A stretch of DNA of 64,000 nt, from assembly GCA_964106915.2 (NCBI GenBank), contig OZ066914.1; one strand, given 5' to 3'. Source of the DNA: Podarcis gaigeae (taxonomy: Eukaryota). The notes under the pieces were generated by a model. It saw only the letters and a list, made by a program, of their open reading frames with translations. It was not told where the DNA came from and did no database searches. The first letter of the stretch is position 1; each line of letters opens with the position of its first letter. Positions 20,762-47,329 of this stretch are shown one piece after another. The position numbers were made by a program, and so were the translations under genes.

Positions 20762-23700
20762 TATGTGCCCACCCTCCCCAATCTACACAAGAATACTTTC
20801 CTCACTGCAATTAGCAACATGGAAACAGAAGAAGAAGAAGAGTTTGGATTTGATATCCCGCTTTATCACTACCCGAAGGAGTCTCAAAGCGGCTAACATT
20901 CTCCTTTCCCTTCCTCCCCCACAACAAACACTCTATGAGGTGAGTGGGGCTGAGAGACTTCAGAGAAGTGTGACTAGCCCAAGGTCACCCAGCAGCTGCA
21001 GGTGGAGGAGCGGAGACGAGTCTATCGCTCTTAACCACTACACCACACTGGCTCTCAATTCTCTTCCCTGCTGCGCTGCTGATGGCTGATTAACTGGGCA
21101 GTAGGAAGAGTGAGCAAGTTTCCCCCACAGCTTGGTGGGCTGTAGAGAGAGTGGTTGAGGGCCCTATGTGGCCCACCCTTGTTTTAAGGAAAGAAAAACA
21201 AATTTTCTTGCCATGGCAAATGAAAAACCAGTAAGCGAAAAACAGGGTGCAAGTGTGGGTAGGGGCGTCAAAACTGAGCTACTAATTTAAAGGTAAAGGT
21301 ACCCCTGTCCGTACGGGCCAGTCTTGACAGACTCTAGGGTTGTGCGCTCATCTCACTCTAGAGGCCGGGAGCCAGCGCTGTCCGCAGACACTTCCGGGTC
21401 ACGTGGCCAGCATGACGAAGCTGCTCTGGCAAACCGGCACCAGAGCAGCACACAGAAACCCCGTTTACCTTCCCGCTGTAAAGCGGTCCCTATTTATCTA
21501 CTTGCACTTAAGGGTGCTTTCGAACTGCTAGGTGGGCAGGAGCTGGGACCGAATGACGGGAGCTCACCCTGCTGCGGGGATTTGAACCGCCGACCATGCG
21601 ATCGGCAAGTCCTGGGGGGTTAAGGTTTTACCCACAGCACCACCCGCGTCCCTACTGAGCTACTAATTTACTTCCTTCCAAAGAACGGAAAATGGGGGAA
21701 ATGCAATGGTAGCAATTTACGTGTCACTCATTCCACAACACTGCTGCCTGCTTGTGACAGGAGGAAGGTGGAGCAAATGGGTCACGAATTGCTGCCTCTG
21801 GCCATGATCTCAAGGCAATTAAGTGGCAAGCAGTTCCTTTACTCCAGATTAACCCTACAAAAATCAGTGGGACTACTCTTGGAACTGTCAGATTGTTCTA
21901 AGAGCTTCACCTAATTCTTAGGACTTTGTGTGATAGGTTAGGATTATTATCCTCATATTTCATTCTGAGATAGTGACTTGCCTACGGTCAACAACTTAAC
22001 TTCATAGCAGAGGTGTGATTTGAACCAGGAGACTGCTGTGTCCATGTCCAAGCCTTCCGAATTAGGATCAAAAGTTTGGTAGAGGTAAAGGTAAAGGGAC
22101 CCCTGACCATTAGGTCCAGTTGTGGCCGACTCTGGGGTTGCAGCGCTCATCTCGCTTTATTGGCCGAGGGAGCCGGCGTACAGCTTCCGGGTCATGTGGC
22201 CAGCATGACTAAGCCGCTTCTGGTGAACCAGAGCAGCGCACGGAAACGCCGTTTACCTTCCCGCCGGAGCGGTACCTATTTATCTACTTGCACTTTGAGG
22301 TGCTTTCGAACTGCTAGGTGGGCAGGAGCAGGAACCGAGCAACGGGAGCTCACCCTGTCGCGGGGATTCGAACCGCCGACCTTCTGATCGGCAAGTCCTA
22401 GGCTCTGTGGTTTAACCCACAGCGCCACCCGCGTCCCCAAAAGTTCGGTACTTGATCCCAAATGCATTATAATTATATAGAGCACAGCAGAAGAAATAAT
22501 CAGGCTTTCACTCCCTAACCTCGTTTTCTGATGAGCTTGCAGACAGAAGCACCTCCTGCGCATCAAAGAACTCAGAGACAGATTCCGACATGGAGAGCCT
22601 GCTTTCATTAGAAACTTGCTGGGAGAGTGGGAGACTGACATGGATCTGTTCACCTGCCTGCAAAAAGGGAAAAACACACACATATGAACTCCAGATGCCC
22701 ACACATGACAGAGAAAAAGCAAGAGCATGCCTAATCAATATATTTTATTGGACAGATGCCCTGCTTCTTCCCTGCATGGCCGCTCCTTCCTCCCTGTTTG
22801 GAAAATAAGCTCTAGCAAACGGAGAGTTCAGGTTGAAAAGAAGCCATTTTGCAAGGGGAGCGCAAAGAACCTCTTTTCCAGCTAGCACTCGAATAACTCC
22901 TTTTTTTGTGTGGCAGGGGACAGAGAGAAATGCCTTCCCTCAAGATTGTTCCTCTGCTACAGGAAAACCCAGCATCTTCCAGCACTGAAATGATACCTTG
23001 TGTTTGATGGGGAAGGGAGGCCCAACCCTCACCTGACACACTTCAGCTTCAGCCATGTTGTAAGACTGCTTTAGCACAATGCTCTCATGTCCTGAAGCCT
23101 GAGCTTGTTTGTTTGCATGTATGCGCACACACAGGGGTGGCCTGCAGCAAAAAGTTGCAGCTCATCATCCCCTATTAAAAGAAACGTTCTTGTTCCTGTT
23201 TCGAACCATTCCTTCCTTCCCAACCTAGCATTCTACTGTGTCCTAGTTTTTTGTTTAGTTTTTTGCAACTGTCTCTACCTTTTGTGGATACTGAACATGC
23301 TCAGGGTTTGTCAGGCTGTTTTATGTTTGCTTGCAGGGGTTTTCTTTTGTCTTAGAGGGTTTTTAAAAGGATGATTTTTTTTGTACTTCTGCAAATGAGC
23401 CTGCTGTTATGTTCGTCTTGTTTCTCAGTGGTCCCATTTTGACTACAATCGTTTTGGCACTCACCACCTGTCTTTGTCTTTAGGTAAAGGTAAAGGGACC
23501 CTTGACAGTTAAGTCCAGTCACGAACGACTCTGGGATTGCGGCGCTCATCTCGCTTTACAGGCCTAGGGAGCCGGCATTTGTCCGCTCCGCAGACAATTT
23601 TTCCAGATCATGTGGCCAGCATGACTAAGCTGCTTCTGGCGCAATGGAACACCAACACCAGAACAGCGCACGGAAACACCGTTTACCTTCCCACCGGAGT

Positions 23701-39000: not shown

Positions 39001-42000
39001 ATCAACCTATTCATTCATTCCAACATATTCTGCATTATTCCTAAAACAATGCAAGGATGGCAGACAAGCACTTATTTAAATCACTGTCTGCAGGCTGTAC
39101 CTTCTAAAAGAAGTGAGTGATTTATAACAGTCCTTCAACATGCCATTAAAAATCCAAGTGGCACTCTAGAGTAAGCAGTTTCACAAGGGTACAACCAACT
39201 TTTTAAAAAAACAACAACATTTTGAGTGGTTTTCTTGAAGGCTACTACACAACTATATATATCCACAGGTAACTGAAGATAGGGGACAAAGTATGTACCA
39301 CAACTCCCACCTCTGCTGGTAAGCTCTGAAAACCTTCCCTATCTCAGGCTTGTATGATATATTCTTTTCTCAGTCCAGGAAGAGGGAACAAATCTTAGCC
39401 ATGCAAAAACCTCCAGATCCTCCTAGCTTTACTTTGTCAAGTTGTCCCTCAATTAAAAGAAGTGAACAGATAGGAGTTCTGGGATAGCCTAGGTACAGGT
39501 AAAGCTGATAATGTGCAGGATCAGGTAGTCCTTTTTATCCAAGAACAGGGCAGGAGGAAGAGGCGAGAGCATGCAAGAGCCACAGACTCATTCACTCTCT
39601 CCTGGGTCCAGAAGTTCAGTTTAAATAGGCTCTCAATTATAACCAGGAGCTTCTCTTTCGATTCTTGTGAGCCATACATGTAACAGAGAGCAATACGTTC
39701 ACAGGCTGAATATACCAATAAGGTGTTTTTTTCCACGTGGCTTTCCAAGGCCCTTGCTTCCCTCCCTAAACAGGCCTTCAAATTAATTTCATTCAACATG
39801 AAAACAAGCATTAGCAAGTCAGAAAGTTCCCGTGAAGCTGTTAACATAGGACTTGGGGCAGAGATAAGGAAATTTAAATTTGACTGCAAGCTTTTCTGAC
39901 CAATCTGCACTTCCTTCAAATTATCAGTGTTCCTTCTTTGAGAGAGCGACAATGACCACTCCCCGCTTAAAACGGGGGGCGCCCTTTGCGTGGACGCGCA
40001 CAGCCCCTAGATCTGGAGCGGCTCCAACAGCATAGGTTTGGCTTTGCCTTCCCTCAGGTGGGATACCTGGAGGTCTCCGCCTACCCCAGTCAGTTGTCCA
40101 ATCCCACCTGGGGGAAGCGTTGCCAAGGAGACCAGGCCAGGTAGGGGAGGGATTAACTGCCCACACAATAGAGGGAGGATCTTACTTGGGAATCCTCTCT
40201 ATATTTTAAAACTCTTGCAGCATGTGAATCTCACAAGGATCTAGTAAGAACTAATGAAAACTATGAATTATCTAAAAAAAAATATGGTACTAAATTATAG
40301 ATAAACATACCGAGAGTTGCAAACTTTACAACACGTAAAATGCAGTTTTAAAATGTTGCAGCCCCTCTTCTTCTTATAACCTCTTGTGTTCTTTTCTGGT
40401 TGCATTGGAAAGCAATGAACCCGACTACTGACTGTCTGTGCAAAACTTTGCATCATAACTTCTAAGGCAATTCAGGAGTTTGTGGGTCATTTGCACACAC
40501 CTCTGGATTAAAGCCTCTATGTGAGAAAAGGAAGGATGGTCAGAAGGCAGACTGACCAGCTTCTGGGGCTTTAGACCTGAGGTGGGGATTTTGTTGGGAG
40601 GATGGAAACTGTAGTCCGGTAACATATAGAGGGCGGCAGGTTCCCCACTGTTGCTTTAGAGTTTCTGAGACTTTGGAACATTCTCTGGAAATTTCCTCTC
40701 AATGAGTCACTCTTCCATTACAGCCCAGAGAAAAAGGGGTGGGGAGGAAGAGAGAGAGAGAAAGAAAGAAGCTGGCTGACTTTTAAAAGAATAAAGTCTG
40801 GTAAAACTGAACCCTTAATTCAACAAACATGGACCCTCCACTGCAAAAAAGAAATAAAAAACAAAAGTTTGTTGCACAAAACACTCTGCATCTAGTTAGC
40901 ACTTCAGACAACAGACATTCCTACCAATGACACAAAAAATGTAAAACACAGCACAGAAACAAGCACAGATTGTTTGAGGGTGCTACATTACCTACAAAAA
41001 GCTCTTTTTGTCAAGTGTACCCTTTTGTTAAATCACTGGTTTCTTCTTCCAGAAAATATTTCAAGAAAACCTACAAAAAGCTCTTTTTGTCAAGTGTACC
41101 CTTTTGTTAAATCACTGGTTTCTTCTTCCAGAAAATATTTCAAGAAAAACTTTCAAGAATGAAAAGGCCAGTGCTTCAACAATTCAGAGGCATCGTTTTT
41201 CTAAAACTGTGGTGAAAATTGAAAACATGAACGCAGTACCTGAAGCTGTATTTTAGCATCTTTGCTGACACTTTTTGTTCTCCATCTTCTTGTGACACGC
41301 TTGTCCTTCTTATCTACACAATTAGCCTACGTCATGAAATAGTTAAAAGCAACAAAGCATTGTGTTAAAAGCACATATAAACAACCGACAGAGACAATAC
41401 TGGAAAAGTTAGTAACAAGAATCTTGGTGTTAGTTTTCAGCAAATAAAATTATGGTAAGAATGCTAACCCAGGCTCTCCATAAAAAGCAAACAATGTGTT
41501 ATTTTAAAACAAAGTTAAAAGCAAACTAACTCTGGAATACAAGAGTCATTTACTTTAGTAAATGAATACAAGAGTCATTTACTTTAGACTTTTCTGCCTA
41601 AATTCAGTGAAAGTATCCTTGCTTCCATATGACACTTAGTAATGCAAAACAAAAACAAAATGAATATTAAACTACTGGAACAAAGTATCTTATGGAACAA
41701 AGGTTATGAAAAATTATATTGGTTGCAGTATTTACAATCCTCACAGAACTGGATTATAGCAACAAGTTATTCTGCCCATGCTTCGATATTTCGTATTTGA
41801 CTAGAGAGTTTCTAAATTTTGCAGGCTGACAATTGGTTTCCTCTAGGAACCAAGTTTTCTATAACAAAACACATCATCATTTTTTTAAAATTTTGAATTC
41901 AAAACTTGCTTACCTGCATATCCGTGAAATTTGGAGCTGACTGAGTCCTCTGAAGTATTTCTAAGTTTTGAAGAATTTTACTGAGTTCCACAAGGTTTGA

Positions 42001-44316
42001 TTGGCAGTGCGTAAGGTCTGACACAAATTATATTCAAAGAAAGTACATTAGTTACCTTGGTCAAGATTTTATTTTTTCTATGGTATCTCATAACTTAAAT
42101 AGGATAAGATTATCAGTATANNNNNNNNNNNNNNNNNNNNNNNNNNNNNNNNNNNNNNNNNNNNNNNNNNNNNNNNNNNNNNNNNNNNNNNNNNNNNNNN
42201 NNNNNNNNNNNNNNNNNNNNNNNNNNNNNNNNNNNNNNNNNNNNNNNNNNNNNNNNNNNNNNNNNNNNNNNNNNNNNNNNNNNNNNNNNNNNNNNNTGTC
42301 TTCCCGTGTAAAAGTTGGGGTGTCTAGGCGACGTTTCGACGAGGTCTCACTCGTCATCTTCAGGCTGGTGCTTTCGGCTTCTTGTTACTGGAACAGAGCG
42401 GGATCTCAATGTTTGAGTTCCTATAAATACTGTAGAGGGGGTGTGGTGTCTAGCCTCCAATGTTCTGGGCAGAGAGGAAGTTCCCAGGCTAGTGTGCCTT
42501 TTCTTCTTTTGTTCCTTAATTACTTGAGAGATACCTTGAGTGATTTCTTGAGTGATATCCTGAGTACCACTTAGGTGGGTCATTAGGTGTGGATTAGTTG
42601 CTAAAGTCTTTGTGTCTTGACCTCTTGAACTTTGTGAAGAGTTTTCCTGAGAAGATGGCTGTATTGCACTTAGTTGTGCTTTGGCTTGGCTTCGTGTATA
42701 GGGGCGAGCTGTGGTTTTGTGGCTTGTGTCAGCCAGATCTGTGTAGGGATTGCAGGGGGGTGCAGCATCCGGAGGTGCCACCATGGATTGGCTACTGGAT
42801 GGTGTCAGTAATTCATCTGTGGAGAGGGTCTGGGTTTGGGTCTGGTGTGGTTGATTGGTGTTGGCGTTCTGTGTGCCTCTGGATCTGGTGTCAGTTTTTG
42901 TGGGGAGGGCTAATTTCCAGATGTCTGGCAAGCGGGATGTGTCGTCACGCTTGTTCATGTTGTGAGGGTGTTTCTCTATCTCGATGGCTTCCATGATTAT
43001 TCTCTTGTGGTGATGTTCCGTGTTAAAGAGCAATTTGGAATCTGCAAAATTAATTTCGTGTCCTGTTTCTTTCATGTGTTGGAAAAGAGAGGAAGTTTTT
43101 TCTTCTTTTTTGACGGCATTCTTGTGTTCTGCGATACGTGCATTTATTCGTCTGTTTGTTTGTCCAATGTACGTGGCTGGGCAGACTTTGCAGGGTATTT
43201 CATAGATCCCTTGGTTTTCCAACTGGATTTTATCCTTGGGGTTTCTGAGGATATTGGCTATTTTTTGGTTGGTGCAAAAGGCTGTTTTGATATTGTGTTT
43301 ATGGAGGATTTTGCTAATTTTATCTGTAGTGCCCTTGATATAAGGAAGGAGGGCCATGCCATTGTTTTCTTCTGTGTCTTGGTTTTTGGGGGGTGTTTCC
43401 TTTTGGATTAGCTTCGTAATCCTGTTTTGCTGGTATCCATTGGCAATTAACACATTTGAGAGATTCTGTAACTCAGTTGTCAAGTGGTCTTTGTCAGCCA
43501 GGCGTTTGGTTCTGGAGATGAGAGTCTTGGCTACGGAGTTTATTTGTGCAGGGTGGTGGTGTGATTGTGCATGTAAGTAGCGGTTGGTGTGTGTTTTTTT
43601 CTGGTAGATAGTGTGTCCTAGGGAGCCATCAGGTTTTTTGTAGATTAGGACGTCAAGGAAGGGAAGTTGGTTGTTGGCTTCTATTTCCATAGTGAATTGT
43701 ATTTTGGGGTGTAAGTTGTTGAGATGTGTGAGGAAGCTATCCAGTTTTTCCTTCCCGTGTGGCCAAATTACAAAGGTGTCGTCAACATATCTGAGCCAAA
43801 GTTTGGGTTTGTGTTCTGACTTGTCTAAAGCATTGGTTTCAAAGTGTTCCATGTACAGGTTTGCGATGACCGGTGAGAGGGGTGATCCCATAGGTGCTCC
43901 TTCTATCTGTTTGTATCTTTGTCCATTGTGGATGAAGTACGTGTTGGTTAGGCAGTGGTTGGTCAGGTCCAAGATGTATTCGGGGGGATTGTATTTGTTT
44001 TGAATAGCTGTCAAGGCTTCATTAATGGGCACTTGTGTGAAGAGAGATACAACATCGAAGCTCACAAGTAGGTCATTAGGATGTAGGTTTTGCTTCTTTA
44101 TTGTTTCTATGAACTGGAAGGAGTTTGGTACGTGTGAAGAGATGGATTCTGCATAGGGATCCCGCTCTGTTCCAGTAACAAGAAGCCGAAAGCACCAGCC
44201 TGAAGATGACGAGTGAGACCTCGTCGAAACGTCGCCTAGACACCCCAACTTTTACACGGGAAGACACCCGAGGACACCAAAACCTGCATTCCTGTACCCG
44301 TGAAAATCTACGAAAG

Positions 44317-44354
<38 letters not shown>

Positions 44355-45954
44355 TGCTACGCTTTCCATAGGCATAAAAAGTTATGCCCTAAATGAGGGA
44401 CTCAACATATAATCCCTGTACTCTTTTAATCTTCTTAATCCAAGAACAGCCAACACGGTGCTCTCCAGATAATGAACTATAAATCCCATCAGAGCGACCC
44501 TTAATTTCATAGGGTATACTTTGAGTAAAAGTTACTTGACTACAACCCAACATGCTGGATGTAAATAATTAGGCAAAAGAAAGCTAAAAGCACATTCCTC
44601 GCCAATTCCTTTTAATTCTTGAACTGGATTTTCATTGGGCTAGGCAATCCACCCCCCCAAATCTTGATTAGCTGTTTTATAAAGATCAGCAGTTCAATAT
44701 ACTGCCGTAATGGCCAGCAAGTAGCCATACCTCTGCCATGACTCATCTTCATCAGATAAAAAGCACTCAGAATATAGGTTGGTTAAATCTCCATTTTCTG
44801 TTAACTGTCAACTTATTGAGTATTGTAAGGGGGGTGGGAATATGTGTTATCGTCCCTGAAGCTGCTGTGACATCTTGGTTGGTGGAATCCAGTCTCAGAT
44901 CAGCTTAGCCAAGAGAACATGTGCTGTGAAATGGGCTCAAGAAGTTGGCTGTCCATTGTCTATTCTAGACCACATTTTGGGTCCCCAGCTGTTGTTGGAC
45001 TACAACTCCCATCAGCCCCAAGCCCAGGTCTTGTTACCTAGGAATGATGCCAGCTGTAGTCCAACAACAGCTGGGAAGCCAAGTTTGAGAAACACTGGCT
45101 AGACCAAGCATCCCCAAACTCAGCCCTCCAGCTGTTTTGGGACTAAAGTTCCCATCATCCCTGACCACTGGTCCAGTTAGCTAGGGATGATGGGAGTTGT
45201 AGTCCCAAAACAGATGGAGGGCCGAGTTTGGGGGTCCCTGGGCTAGACCATTCGCAGCATGCCATAAAAACTACAGATATAACATTAAAAACTAATCAGG
45301 AACCCTCATTTGTTTGTTTTTTTAAATAGCTCCCAGATACCTTGACACAAACTAGACAGATTTAGAAAAAGGCTAGTGCCAAACAACATTAACCTCCATT
45401 TTTAACCTGAAAGCCACCATAGGCAGGATTCATTGTGACCAGAAGTACCAACAGATTGCCCTTATTATTTTTTTATTGTATTAGTTATTAAATTCATATG
45501 CTACCCTTCATCCGAAAAGCACAGAGTGGTTTACAACATAAAAACACAAAATACATATTAGCAAAAAACAGTAAATCCACTGTTATAGGGAAATATGAAT
45601 ACTACATATTTAAAGCCCTAAATGGCCTCAGTCCTATATACCTAAAGGAGCATTTCCACCCCCATCATCCAGCCTGGACACTGAGGTCCAGCGCCGAGGG
45701 CTTTCTGGTGGTTCCCTCACTATGAGAAGTGAGGTTACAGGGAACCAGGCAGAGGGCCTTCTCGCCTGCCCTGTGGAACGCCCTCCCAGCAGATGTCAAG
45801 GCAATAAACAACTATTTTACTTTTAAAAGACAACTGAAGGCGGCCCTAAAAGGGAAGTTTTTAATGCCTGATGCTGTATTGTTTTGTATATTCAGTGGAA
45901 GCCACCCAGAGTGGCTGGGGAAACCCAGCCAGATGGGTGGGGTATAAATATTAA

Positions 45955-46001
<47 letters not shown>

Positions 46002-47329
46002 TGGGAACTATCTATTAGCCAGAAGCTGAGTACCTATAAATGGAAGGAAAGAAGCTTGACTAGAGACTGACCTTCCGCACACCTGTCCATCTCCTCGGAG
46101 TCTTGCAACCAAGCAACTACTTTACTTTGGCCAGTGGTACATGTTGCGGGGAGGCTGTTGCTGCAGGTAATTGATGGCTGCCATGGGAAATTATTCTGTG
46201 CGACCTAAAAAAAACAACCCAAAGATTCGAAAATTGTATAACTGAATACCGGGAGAAAAATGGCCTGTGCTAAAATCAAACCATCAGACAAGAAACAAAT
46301 GATATCCCATTTGAAAGAAGGCAAGCAAGTATGAATTCAGCACCTTAGCCCAGTGGTTCACAAACTCACCACCACCACCATGGACTGCTTGAAAATTGAT
46401 GGTGATCTTGGTTTTTCTGCCTGTTGTAACAATTGTAATGCACTGTGCTGGGTGCTACATTGTTTTTAAACGTATTTTTATTGTGTCCTTTCTTTCTAAT
46501 AATGTATTTTATTGTAATACAATTTGCATTCCATAGGATTAAAACTGTGATACAATAAAATACAATGAACAGAACGAAATAAGCAATAAAAATACAATTA
46601 AAAATGATGGTGTATATCAAATGTGGACATGCCGCAAACCACCTGACCCAAGCTTGTGGTCCACTGGCGGATGACAGTTTGGGAGCCCCTTCTCTAGTCC
46701 AAATAAAACATCAATAACAAGCAGTTCAGCAAAAGTGGTAAAATCTGGGACTTATTCAGCTTCCTCTTCTCTTCACTTCACTAGTGCTATCAATAATGGC
46801 ACACATTTCCTAACGGAGGACAATGGTTAGAAAATGTGGTGGATTATTAAACAAGTATCTTCCGATCAGGGACGTTTTATACCTTGGCCTCCAGGGCAGC
46901 AACATTAGCAGCTGGTGAAGATTCAGTAGTTGACGCTGAAGGGAATATGTGGAATCCGGCATCTCGTGGTGATCGTACAATCTCGTTCTGACGGTATAAC
47001 CTGTGGTGGCGCAGCCTCGATACCCAAGCATCAAACGAGTCCTGGGATTTTACCTAGTGAGAACGGGGAGCTCAGTAATAGTATCTGACTGTTTCAAATT
47101 GAGAAGAAAACTAATGGGAAGCATTCCTTACTTTCAAATGGTAAATATGCTCTTCAGTGTCAAGGTCTATCCTCCGAGTTTTCTTTTTAATCGACATAAC
47201 TGATAAGCCAACATCTATGCTTCCGTGAACCTTTCCTTTCTGAGTCTGAAAAATAAAAATGAAGAGAAAACATTGCCAATGAGCTGGGAAAAATAAGGTC
47301 ATTTATTTATTTAAGTATTTATATATCAC

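What the first reader, a model, noticed from the sequence alone, without database searches (positions are those of the whole stretch)
42297..44320. Hammerhead-ribozyme motif and its perfect antisense copy inside the OSBPL6 pre-mRNA, delivered by a Penelope-like element
Seen: the PLE is co-oriented with OSBPL6 in intron 7, so the pre-mRNA carries CUGAAGA-stemII-GAAAC-GUC (42363->42330) about 310 nt upstream of the exon-8 acceptor (42017). The inverted pLTR (44266->44158) is transcribed ~1.75 kb earlier and is an exact 109-nt antisense of the ribozyme-containing arm. Established: PLE pLTRs carry minimal hammerheads with palindromic stem III that are thought to act as dimers, and 5'-truncated PLEs often have inverted pLTRs. 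Inference: intronic self-cleavage of the host transcript could compete with a long-range duplex that masks the ribozyme and is itself an ADAR/Dicer substrate, making a potential cleave-or-mask switch. Caveat: stem I has only ~2 Watson-Crick pairs (gc/gc), so activity is uncertain.
Basis: partly seen in the sequence, partly recalled or inferred. Interest (0 to 1): 0.8.

Follow-up and report, generated by a model that had tools for sequence, protein, structure and literature searches.

The report
Penelope retrotransposon hammerhead in gene intron
A young, dead-on-arrival Penelope-like retrotransposon sits in an intron of an oxysterol-binding-protein gene, and its hammerhead-ribozyme motif and mirror-image copy are standard equipment and a standard insertion by-product of this transposon family, not a host regulatory switch.

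Summary
The interpretation as a host "cleave-or-mask switch" is not supported.

**What is there**
- A 34-nt minimal type-I hammerhead motif lies at 42363->42330 (-), and an identical copy lies at 44200-44233 (+).
- They sit in inverted arms that are 115 nt long and 98% complementary, with 109 nt exact.
- Rfam finds no hammerhead. A covariance model built only from seven relatives (viper, anole, lamprey, ant and a metagenome contig) finds both copies at 36.6 bits; the next best hit scores 12.5 bits.
- Helices I and II covary across the relatives.

**What it is**
- The carrier is a 5'-truncated Penelope-like element with RT and GIY-YIG domains. It is 97.9% identical to a Podarcis muralis copy.
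- It is inserted in a (TA)n microsatellite, in an intron of an OSBP-related gene, and is co-oriented with that gene.
- Relatives in four other species are built the same way, with an inverted 5' copy and a direct 3' copy. The literature describes this as typical of the class.

**Why the switch is unlikely**
- There is only one sense copy, and it has no helix III loop, so it would need a partner to form a dimer.
- Helix I has only two contiguous pairs.
- The anole homologue cleaves only when the element's protein is added.
- The arm duplex (-234.5 kcal/mol) dwarfs the active fold.

The scan's first readers noted the same family at three other places in this genome.

The parts
44321..44350 (.). 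(TA)15 microsatellite flanking the element. It is the presumed insertion target.
   Evidence: Sequence read. Relatives in L001 and L002 are likewise embedded in (TA)n on both sides. (TA)n is listed as a preferred target for Penelope-like elements in PMC8557442.
44152..44320 (+). Inverted 5' copy of the element's 3' end (pLTR piece plus terminal 'tail'). On the host-gene strand it reads as the antisense of the ribozyme arm.
   Evidence: Inverted repeat I1. Alignment to the other arm. blastn to L001 at 98.5% over 194 nt. The 44267-44320 part has its potential partner under the N run.
44200..44233 (+). Minimal hammerhead motif on the plus strand, which is antisense to the host gene.
   Evidence: Pattern match. 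Covariance model R1 built from relatives: 36.6 bits, E about 8e-9.
42347..44151 (-). 5'-truncated ORF of the Penelope-like element, with no internal stop codon. RVT_1 maps at about 44107-43712 and GIY-YIG at about 43210-43088. The UGA stop (42349-42347) is the first three bases of the loop of hammerhead helix II.
   Evidence: ORF list. Pfam RVT_1 at E 4e-13, covering profile positions 55-176 of 205, and GIY-YIG at 20.5 bits against a cut-off of 22.6. 93% identity to a Podarcis muralis protein, 80% to Vipera and 47% to Anolis.
42297..42411 (-). Direct 3' pLTR arm on the host-gene strand. It is cut off by the N run.
42330..42363 (-). Minimal type-I hammerhead motif on the pre-mRNA strand. Layout: C3-A9 at 42363-42357, extra U at 42356, helix II at 42355-42350 paired with 42343-42338, GAAA at 42337-42334, C15.2 and G16.2 at 42333-42332, U16.1 at 42331, C17 at 42330. 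The predicted cleavage site is between 42330 and 42329.
42121..42296 (.). N run (176 N) that hides the element's 3' boundary. Not filled.
41913..42017 (-). Downstream host coding exon. It is bounded by an AG acceptor and a GT donor and reads open in frame 3 (34 aa).
   Evidence: Sequence. Frame 1 has a stop. Frame 3 was read by eye.

Best explanation
This is a recent, 5'-truncated and therefore non-autonomous insertion of a Penelope/Poseidon-like retrotransposon. It landed in a (TA)n microsatellite inside an intron of an OSBP-related host gene, in the same orientation as that gene.

The element carries the family's standard minimal type-I hammerhead in its 3' terminal repeat. During integration, both target strands were probably cut and extended from the same RNA template. 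That produced a short inverted copy of the element's 3' end at its 5' side.

The hammerhead is a real member of its class at the level of sequence and structure. At this locus it is a passenger. A single copy without a helix III loop needs a second copy, and probably the element's own protein, to cleave. In the host pre-mRNA it is expected to be locked in a perfect duplex of at least 109 bp with the upstream arm.

The net effect on the host gene is most likely nil, or that of any intronic inverted repeat.

Shown here: the anatomy, family membership, covariation, genericity of the arrangement, youth of the insertion, and energetics. Inferred: the integration mechanism and the lack of cleavage in vivo.
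For: - **Motif and arms at the stated coordinates:**
- **Carrier is a Penelope-like element:** RT and GIY-YIG domains. There are 1222 homologues at E<=1e-10, the best being Podarcis muralis at 93%.
- **Same hammerhead architecture in relatives:** found at the 3' end or pLTR of elements from Podarcis, Vipera, Anolis, Petromyzon, an ant and a metagenome contig.
- **Covariation:** 90% of cells are paired, against 58% in shuffles. Nine of ten pairs show changes on both sides. The two innermost helix I pairs are paired in 8 of 8 sequences, although my search descriptor did not require helix I.
- **Independent model:** a covariance model built without the window's sequence scores both copies at 36.6 bits (E about 8e-9). 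The next best hit scores 12.5 bits.
- **Generic arrangement:** inverted 5' copy, direct 3' copy and (TA)n flanks recur in L001 (arms of about 2.3 kb) and L002 (321 and 1477 nt). The inverted pairing also recurs in L005 and L006.
[quoted passage not shown] The anole element's nuclease cuts and extends both strands, its hammerhead is inactive without the element's protein, and no RNA-seq ends were found at its cleavage site (PMC11167929). Minimal hammerheads are inactive as monomers and weak as dimers (PMC4209133).
- **Youth:** the arms are identical at 109 of 109 positions. The element is 97.9% identical over 1860 nt to the Podarcis copy.
- **Energetics:** the arm duplex is -234.5 kcal/mol against -20.6 for the arm alone. 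The double-hammerhead fold is -18.1 against -30.2 for the best homodimer fold.
Against: - Absence of cleavage in vivo is therefore inferred, not shown.
- Nearest-neighbour energies ignore the tertiary contacts of the hammerhead core and co-transcriptional kinetics.
- The family looks recently active, so the element's protein could be present in some cells and could act as a chaperone for cleavage.
- The 3' boundary is hidden by Ns, so the target-site structure on that side is unknown.
- The helix II covariation is partly pre-selected, because my descriptor required at least four terminal pairs.
Confidence: 0.85

Rival explanations
1. The intronic hammerhead self-cleaves the host pre-mRNA in competition with a masking duplex formed with the inverted arm, giving a regulated cleave-or-mask switch for the host gene.
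For: - A sense-strand hammerhead with an intact catalytic core lies about 312 nt upstream of an exon acceptor.
- A perfect antisense arm is transcribed earlier.
- Intronic ribozymes that affect host mRNA are known, for example the conserved intronic hammerheads and the CPEB3 ribozyme (references in PMC6765202; PMC10919898).
Against: - There is one sense copy only in the window, and it has no helix III loop, so it has no cis partner for a dimer.
- Helix I has two contiguous pairs.
- Homologous hammerheads are inactive alone in vitro.
- The duplex is overwhelmingly more stable.
- The architecture is generic to insertions of this family in five species.
- The insertion is too young to have been selected.
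Confidence: 0.03
2. The hammerhead is irrelevant, but the intronic hairpin (a perfect stem of at least 109 bp with a 1.7-kb loop) is processed as double-stranded RNA. It would be hyper-edited by ADAR and/or diced into small RNAs that could target active copies of the same retrotransposon family in trans.
For: - The predicted duplex is -234.5 kcal/mol.
- Both arms lie within one intron of a gene on the same strand.
- Long intronic inverted repeats are the classic ADAR substrates (established knowledge).
- The family has near-identical copies elsewhere (first-reader notes).
Against: It was not tested, because no reads could be obtained. Even if editing occurs, it would be a passive consequence with no demonstrated function. 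Host-gene expression level and tissue are unknown.
Confidence: 0.1
3. The inverted arm and the adjacent N run are an assembly artefact of a repetitive element in a microsatellite, and not the real structure of the locus.
For: - The 3' arm abuts a 176-N run.
- PMC8557442 notes that complex tandem or inverted Penelope-like insertions cause assembly problems.
Against: - The same inverted arrangement appears in independent chromosome-level assemblies of four other species.
- The junction at 44152-44158 is a clean join between a truncated RT and an inverted pLTR.
- The operators state that N runs may be deliberate masking.
Confidence: 0.02

Closest known systems
Minimal hammerhead ribozymes (min-HHR) of metazoan Penelope-like elements (Cervera and de la Pena 2014, PMC4209133; Lunse et al. 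2016, cited in PMC6765202)
   Same: CUGANGA and GAAA boxes, a GUC cleavage triplet, an unpaired nucleotide between A9 and G10.1, a G10.1-C11.1 pair, a 6-bp helix II, a palindromic C15.2-G16.2 with no loop 3, a short helix I, and a location in the pLTR next to an RT/GIY-YIG ORF.
   Different: Nothing of substance differs. Helix I is at the short end of the range: two contiguous pairs, as in D. virilis, against three or four in most of the relatives sampled here.
PAc, the Poseidon element of Anolis carolinensis (PMC11167929)
   Same: It is a squamate element with 47% protein identity. The hammerhead architecture is the same, and A9, the extra U and G10.1 form an AUG. Its nuclease acts on both target strands, which can explain inverted copies.
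   Different: In PAc-type copies (L003) the pLTRs are direct and the ORF is full length (836 aa). The window's copy is 5'-truncated with an inverted 5' piece, and its upstream ORF runs into the ribozyme and stops in the helix II loop.
[quoted passage not shown]
   Same: A self-cleaving motif on the sense strand of a host intron, upstream of an exon.
   Different: Those ribozymes are monomerically stable, detected by Rfam, conserved at orthologous loci over long times, and shown to be active. This one is a young transposon passenger without a helix III loop, and Rfam does not detect it.
Intronic inverted-repeat double-stranded RNAs edited by ADAR (for example inverted Alu pairs)
   Same: Two inverted copies of a retroelement in one intron, able to form a long perfect duplex.
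   Different: Here both arms come from one insertion event of one element. Editing was not tested.

Membership tests
Minimal hammerhead of Penelope-like elements (type I, no loop 3) | Catalytic boxes C3-U-G-A-N-G-A9 and G12-A-A14, A15.1-U16.1, and H17 at the cleavage site | tested here: met
   CUGAAGA, GAAA and a GUC triplet are present. These columns are invariant in 8 of 8 aligned relatives.
Minimal hammerhead of Penelope-like elements (type I, no loop 3) | An unpaired nucleotide between A9 and G10.1, and a G10.1-C11.1 pair | tested here: met
   The extra U is at 42356. The G-C pair is invariant in 8 of 8 sequences (pair 15-33). Both features are listed as family hallmarks in PMC4209133.
Minimal hammerhead of Penelope-like elements (type I, no loop 3) | A long helix II (6-8 bp) supported by compensatory changes | tested here: met
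   Helix II is 6 bp here. Five of its six pairs show changes on both sides across relatives, and 100% of cells are paired. Caveat: my descriptor required at least four terminal pairs.
Minimal hammerhead of Penelope-like elements (type I, no loop 3) | Palindromic positions 15.2-16.2 with no loop 3 or a palindromic one, which implies a dimer | tested here: met
   A-C-G-U follows GAA. The CG is invariant in all eight sequences.
Minimal hammerhead of Penelope-like elements (type I, no loop 3) | A short helix I (4-5 bp typical; 2 bp in D. virilis) | tested here: inconclusive
   There are two contiguous pairs plus one past a bulge. The relatives have 2-4 pairs. The two innermost pairs are paired in 8 of 8 sequences with covariation.
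Minimal hammerhead of Penelope-like elements (type I, no loop 3) | Recognised by a structure model trained on other members | tested here: met
   Model R1, built from seven relatives without the window's sequence, gives 36.6 bits (E about 8e-9) for both copies. The next best hit scores 12.5 bits.
Minimal hammerhead of Penelope-like elements (type I, no loop 3) | Self-cleavage activity, as a dimer or with the element's protein | not testable with these tools
   This needs in vitro transcription or RNA-end mapping.
Rfam hammerhead families (Hammerhead_1, Hammerhead_3, HH9, HH10, Hammerhead_II) | A match to the curated covariance model | tested here: not met
   There is no hammerhead hit at E<=10 on 7 kb or on 164 nt. 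The anole PAc-type hammerhead is missed as well, so these models do not cover the loop-less variant.
Penelope-like element with endonuclease (Penelope/Poseidon type) | A single ORF with a reverse transcriptase followed by a C-terminal GIY-YIG nuclease | tested here: met
   RVT_1 at E 4e-13. GIY-YIG scores 20.5 bits, just under Pfam's cut-off of 22.6. Homologues are annotated with RVT_1, DUF8422 and HTH_animal. The RT is truncated at its 5' end (profile positions 55-176 of 205).
Penelope-like element with endonuclease (Penelope/Poseidon type) | pLTR repeats (direct or inverted), 5' truncation, an adjacent inverted 5' copy, a terminal tail and a microsatellite target | tested here: met
   compared with the description in PMC8557442. 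The 3' boundary is hidden by Ns.
Host-domesticated intronic ribozyme | Conservation at the orthologous locus, and activity as a monomer | tested here: not met
   The insertion is young: the arms are identical at 109 of 109 positions, and it is 97.9% identical to another copy. It has no helix III loop, so it cannot fold as a monomer. Orthologous loci in other species could not be fetched.
ADAR-edited intronic inverted repeat | A long intramolecular duplex in one transcript, with A-to-I editing clusters | tested here: inconclusive
   The duplex is predicted at -234.5 kcal/mol, and both arms lie in one intron. Editing could not be tested.

The most novel reading that the evidence does not exclude
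When the retrotransposon family is active, its protein, or transcripts from other copies, could supply the missing chaperone or dimer partner. The sense-strand hammerhead in the nascent host intron would then be cut unless the inverted arm masks it. That would couple the integrity of an OSBP-related pre-mRNA to transposon activity.
Probability: 0.03. Interest if true: 0.6.

Novelty: new member of a known kind. Interest (0 to 1): 0.15.

Why it matters
It matters mainly as a calibration point.

- **Recognition.** Loop-less hammerheads of Penelope-like elements are invisible to Rfam. A small covariance model or descriptor recognises them easily.
- **Interpretation.** The arrangement of a ribozyme plus a perfect antisense copy is a signature of how this family integrates. 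It recurs from lamprey to ant to squamates. Similar findings elsewhere in this genome should therefore be read as ordinary insertions unless RNA data say otherwise.
- **If the switch idea were true.** It would be a rare case of a transposon ribozyme acting on a host pre-mRNA. Nothing found here favours that.

Tried and rejected
- **Rfam scans.** I scanned 40000-47000 and 42297-42460 at E<=10 and found no hammerhead. I do not take this as evidence against the motif, because the anole PAc-type hammerhead is also missed.
- **Chance occurrence of the motif.** Rejected: none expected in shuffles.
- **Unusual stability of the ribozyme arm.** Rejected: z = -0.34 against shuffles. Only helix II forms reliably.
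- **A second sense-strand hammerhead that could act as a cis dimer partner.** None was found in the 64 kb.
- **Lunse et al. 2016 (PMC5785218).** The paper is not held in the library. It is cited only through PMC6765202.
- **Naming the host gene as OSBPL6.** I verified it only at domain level. The costly protein search was not spent on this side issue.
- **Limits I kept to.** The N run was not filled or inferred from other copies. The alignment tool printed a consensus line for the 47-nt ribozyme alignments, and I do not reproduce or use it.
Full report
**1. Observation**

It consists of CUGAAGA, one unpaired U, a 6-bp helix II closed by a 6-nt loop, then GAAA, CG, UC. It runs from 42363 to 42330, with C17 at 42330.

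The pattern occurs exactly twice in the 64-kb window: once on the minus strand, and once on the plus strand at 44200-44233. None is expected in dinucleotide-preserving shuffles.

The repeat finder reports inverted arms at 42297-42411 and 44152-44266. They are 115 nt long, 98% complementary and 1740 nt apart. A pairwise alignment shows that 109 consecutive positions are identical.

Two things limit what can be said about the arms. The downstream arm stops at a run of 176 N (42121-42296). The upstream arm continues outward to 44320, where a (TA)15 microsatellite begins. The duplex is therefore at least 115 nt and could be up to about 169 nt. The Ns were left as they are.

**2. Is it a hammerhead?**

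Rfam gives no hammerhead match at E<=10 on 7 kb, or on the 164 nt around the motif.

That negative result is uninformative. The same scan also misses the hammerhead of an Anolis carolinensis element. In that element the start codon and cut site sit exactly as described for PAc, the element whose ribozyme was shown experimentally to cleave (PMC11167929).

The published description of metazoan Penelope-like-element minimal hammerheads (PMC4209133) lists these features:
- an unpaired nucleotide between A9 and G10.1;
- a conserved G10.1-C11.1 pair;
- a long helix II;
- a palindromic 15.2-16.2 with no loop 3;
- a short helix I (2 bp in D. virilis).

The window's motif has all of them.

For an independent test, I found relatives of the element's protein and fetched the DNA around eight of them. 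I then scanned that DNA with a simple descriptor. The same architecture appears in or next to the elements from:
- Podarcis muralis (identical motif);
- Vipera latastei (two variants);
- Anolis carolinensis;
- Petromyzon marinus (two variants);
- the ant Mycetomoellerius zeteki;
- a metagenome contig.

On an alignment of the eight distinct sequences, 90% of pair cells form standard pairs, against 58% in shuffles. Nine of the ten pairs show changes on both sides. Sliding the partners by one to three columns destroys the signal.

Helix II pairing was partly imposed by my descriptor. Helix I was not, yet its two innermost pairs hold in 8 of 8 sequences with four and two pair types respectively.

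A covariance model built from the seven relatives alone scores both window copies at 36.6 bits, with a rough E-value of 8e-9. The next best hit in the window scores 12.5 bits.

The motif is therefore a bona fide member of the class by sequence and structure. Its helix I is at the weak end of the range: two contiguous pairs, plus an A-U pair past a bulged C.

**3. What carries it**

The minus strand has a 633-codon open frame from 44248 to 42347. Pfam finds a reverse transcriptase domain that lacks its first quarter (profile positions 55-176 of 205) and a GIY-YIG nuclease just below the cut-off.

The best relative is an uncharacterised Podarcis muralis protein at 93% identity, followed by Vipera at 80% and Anolis at 47%. 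At the DNA level the element is 97.9% identical over 1860 nt to the Podarcis copy, without gaps. The family has therefore been active recently, and the window probably comes from a lacertid lizard.

The copy is 5'-truncated. The sense body starts in the middle of the RT at about 44151-44158, directly abutting the inverted arm. It is dead on arrival.

**4. The antisense copy is generic**

- In the Podarcis locus, two inverted copies of the 3' part of the element face each other, with arms of about 2.3 kb and 5 nt between them.
- In the Vipera locus, two insertions have inverted arms of 321 and 1477 nt.
- All of these are embedded in (TA)n on both sides.
- The lamprey and ant loci also show an inverted upstream hammerhead paired with a direct downstream one.
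- Only the full-length anole copy has direct repeats.

This matches the literature. Penelope-like insertions are often 5'-truncated and often have an inverted 5'-truncated copy adjacent. They carry a 30-40-bp tail at one end and prefer microsatellites such as (TA)n (PMC8557442). The purified anole enzyme cuts and extends both strands of its target (PMC11167929), which offers a mechanism for the inverted copies.

The window's arrangement is therefore a by-product of integration. That mechanism is inferred here, not shown.

**5. Host context**

Stop-free minus-strand stretches give colinear matches to the Oxysterol_BP domain:
- profile positions 1-57 at about 19 kb;
- 58-107 at about 16.4 kb;
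- 200-236 at about 12.3 kb;
- 264-305 at about 9.8 kb;
- 304-349 at about 8.3 kb.

A PH domain piece matches at about 47.2 kb.

The host is thus an OSBP-related gene on the minus strand, and the element is intronic and co-oriented with it. The next exon downstream is 42017-41913, bounded by AG and GT and open in frame 3.

The peptides look like ORP6 to me from memory, but I did not test that name or the exon numbering.

**6. Would it work as a switch?**

- *Dimer partner.* The model search finds no other sense-strand hammerhead in the window, so there is no partner in cis. Because A15.1-C-G-U16.1 has no loop, a monomer cannot form helix III.
- *Energetics.* The double-hammerhead fold of two copies evaluates to -18.1 kcal/mol. 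That is less stable than two separately folded monomers (-23.4) or the best homodimer (-30.2). The duplex between the two arms is -234.5 kcal/mol, against -20.6 for the ribozyme arm alone. These numbers ignore tertiary contacts and kinetics.
- *Order of transcription.* The antisense arm is transcribed first, so it is already available when the ribozyme arm emerges.
- *Published activity.* A schistosome minimal hammerhead was inactive as a monomer and weak as a dimer or trimer (PMC4209133). The anole hammerhead showed no cleavage without the element's protein, and no RNA-seq reads began or ended at its cut site (PMC11167929).
- *Age.* The insertion is too young for host selection to have shaped it.

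I put the cleave-or-mask switch at about 3%. Passive editing or dicing of the hairpin is plausible but untested. It would be a property of any intronic inverted repeat.

**7. What could not be done**

I did not pursue reads by any other route. No statement here about expression, editing, small RNAs or cleavage ends rests on data.

**8. Earlier notes of this scan**

First-stage notes on the same genome describe three other places with the same family:
- a young insertion near HOXC13;
- a 250-bp palindrome with two opposed hammerheads in (TA)n;
- a hammerhead on the EYA4 pre-mRNA strand.

Another note on this window points out the overlap of the ribozyme with the ORF end. These notes are unchecked, but they agree with a multi-copy, recently active family.

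**9. Verdict**

The element is an ordinary new member of a well-described kind. The proposed host function is unsupported. Interest is low.

Noticed in passing
window 42347-42357 (-): A9, the extra U and G10.1 of the hammerhead form an AUG that opens a short ORF (MTSETSS...). The RT/nuclease ORF, in another frame, ends at a UGA that is the first three bases of the helix II loop, a few bases downstream of that AUG. A start codon at the beginning of stem II is published for the anole PAc element (PMC11167929). The extra nucleotide is A or C in the lamprey and ant relatives, so the AUG is not universal.
   Followed up: partly
L001 4001-14158 (Podarcis muralis, protein P0001): The annotated gene LOC144326219 looks like a chimeric gene model across a transposon palindrome. 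Its first 37 or so residues match the antisense-strand ORF that the window also shows at 43671-44003 (+). The rest is the sense RT/nuclease ORF.
   Followed up: partly
L002 1-13096 (Vipera latastei): Two insertions of the same family, each with inverted arms and (TA)n flanks, lie within the span of a gene whose product matches thiamin pyrophosphokinase domains, on the same strand. This is another case of a sense-oriented intronic hammerhead with its antisense copy.
   Followed up: no
window 44977-45246: A cluster of near-palindromic repeats: a 64-nt inverted repeat at 86%, and direct copies 143 nt apart. They give sub-threshold hits on both strands to the miRNA families mir-5408 and mir-3160 (39-48 bits against cut-offs of 80-90). 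This looks like a MITE-type hairpin repeat rather than a miRNA gene.
   Followed up: no
window 41000-41151 and 41535-41587: There are two short tandem duplications in the intron downstream of the exon. One has 73-nt copies at 99% identity, 79 nt apart. The other has 24-nt copies at 100% identity, 29 nt apart.
   Followed up: no
window 22511-22744 (-): An exon-like stretch encodes an EFFDAQE motif, which resembles an FFAT motif as found in the ORP3/6/7 subfamily. That identification is from memory and was not tested.
   Followed up: no
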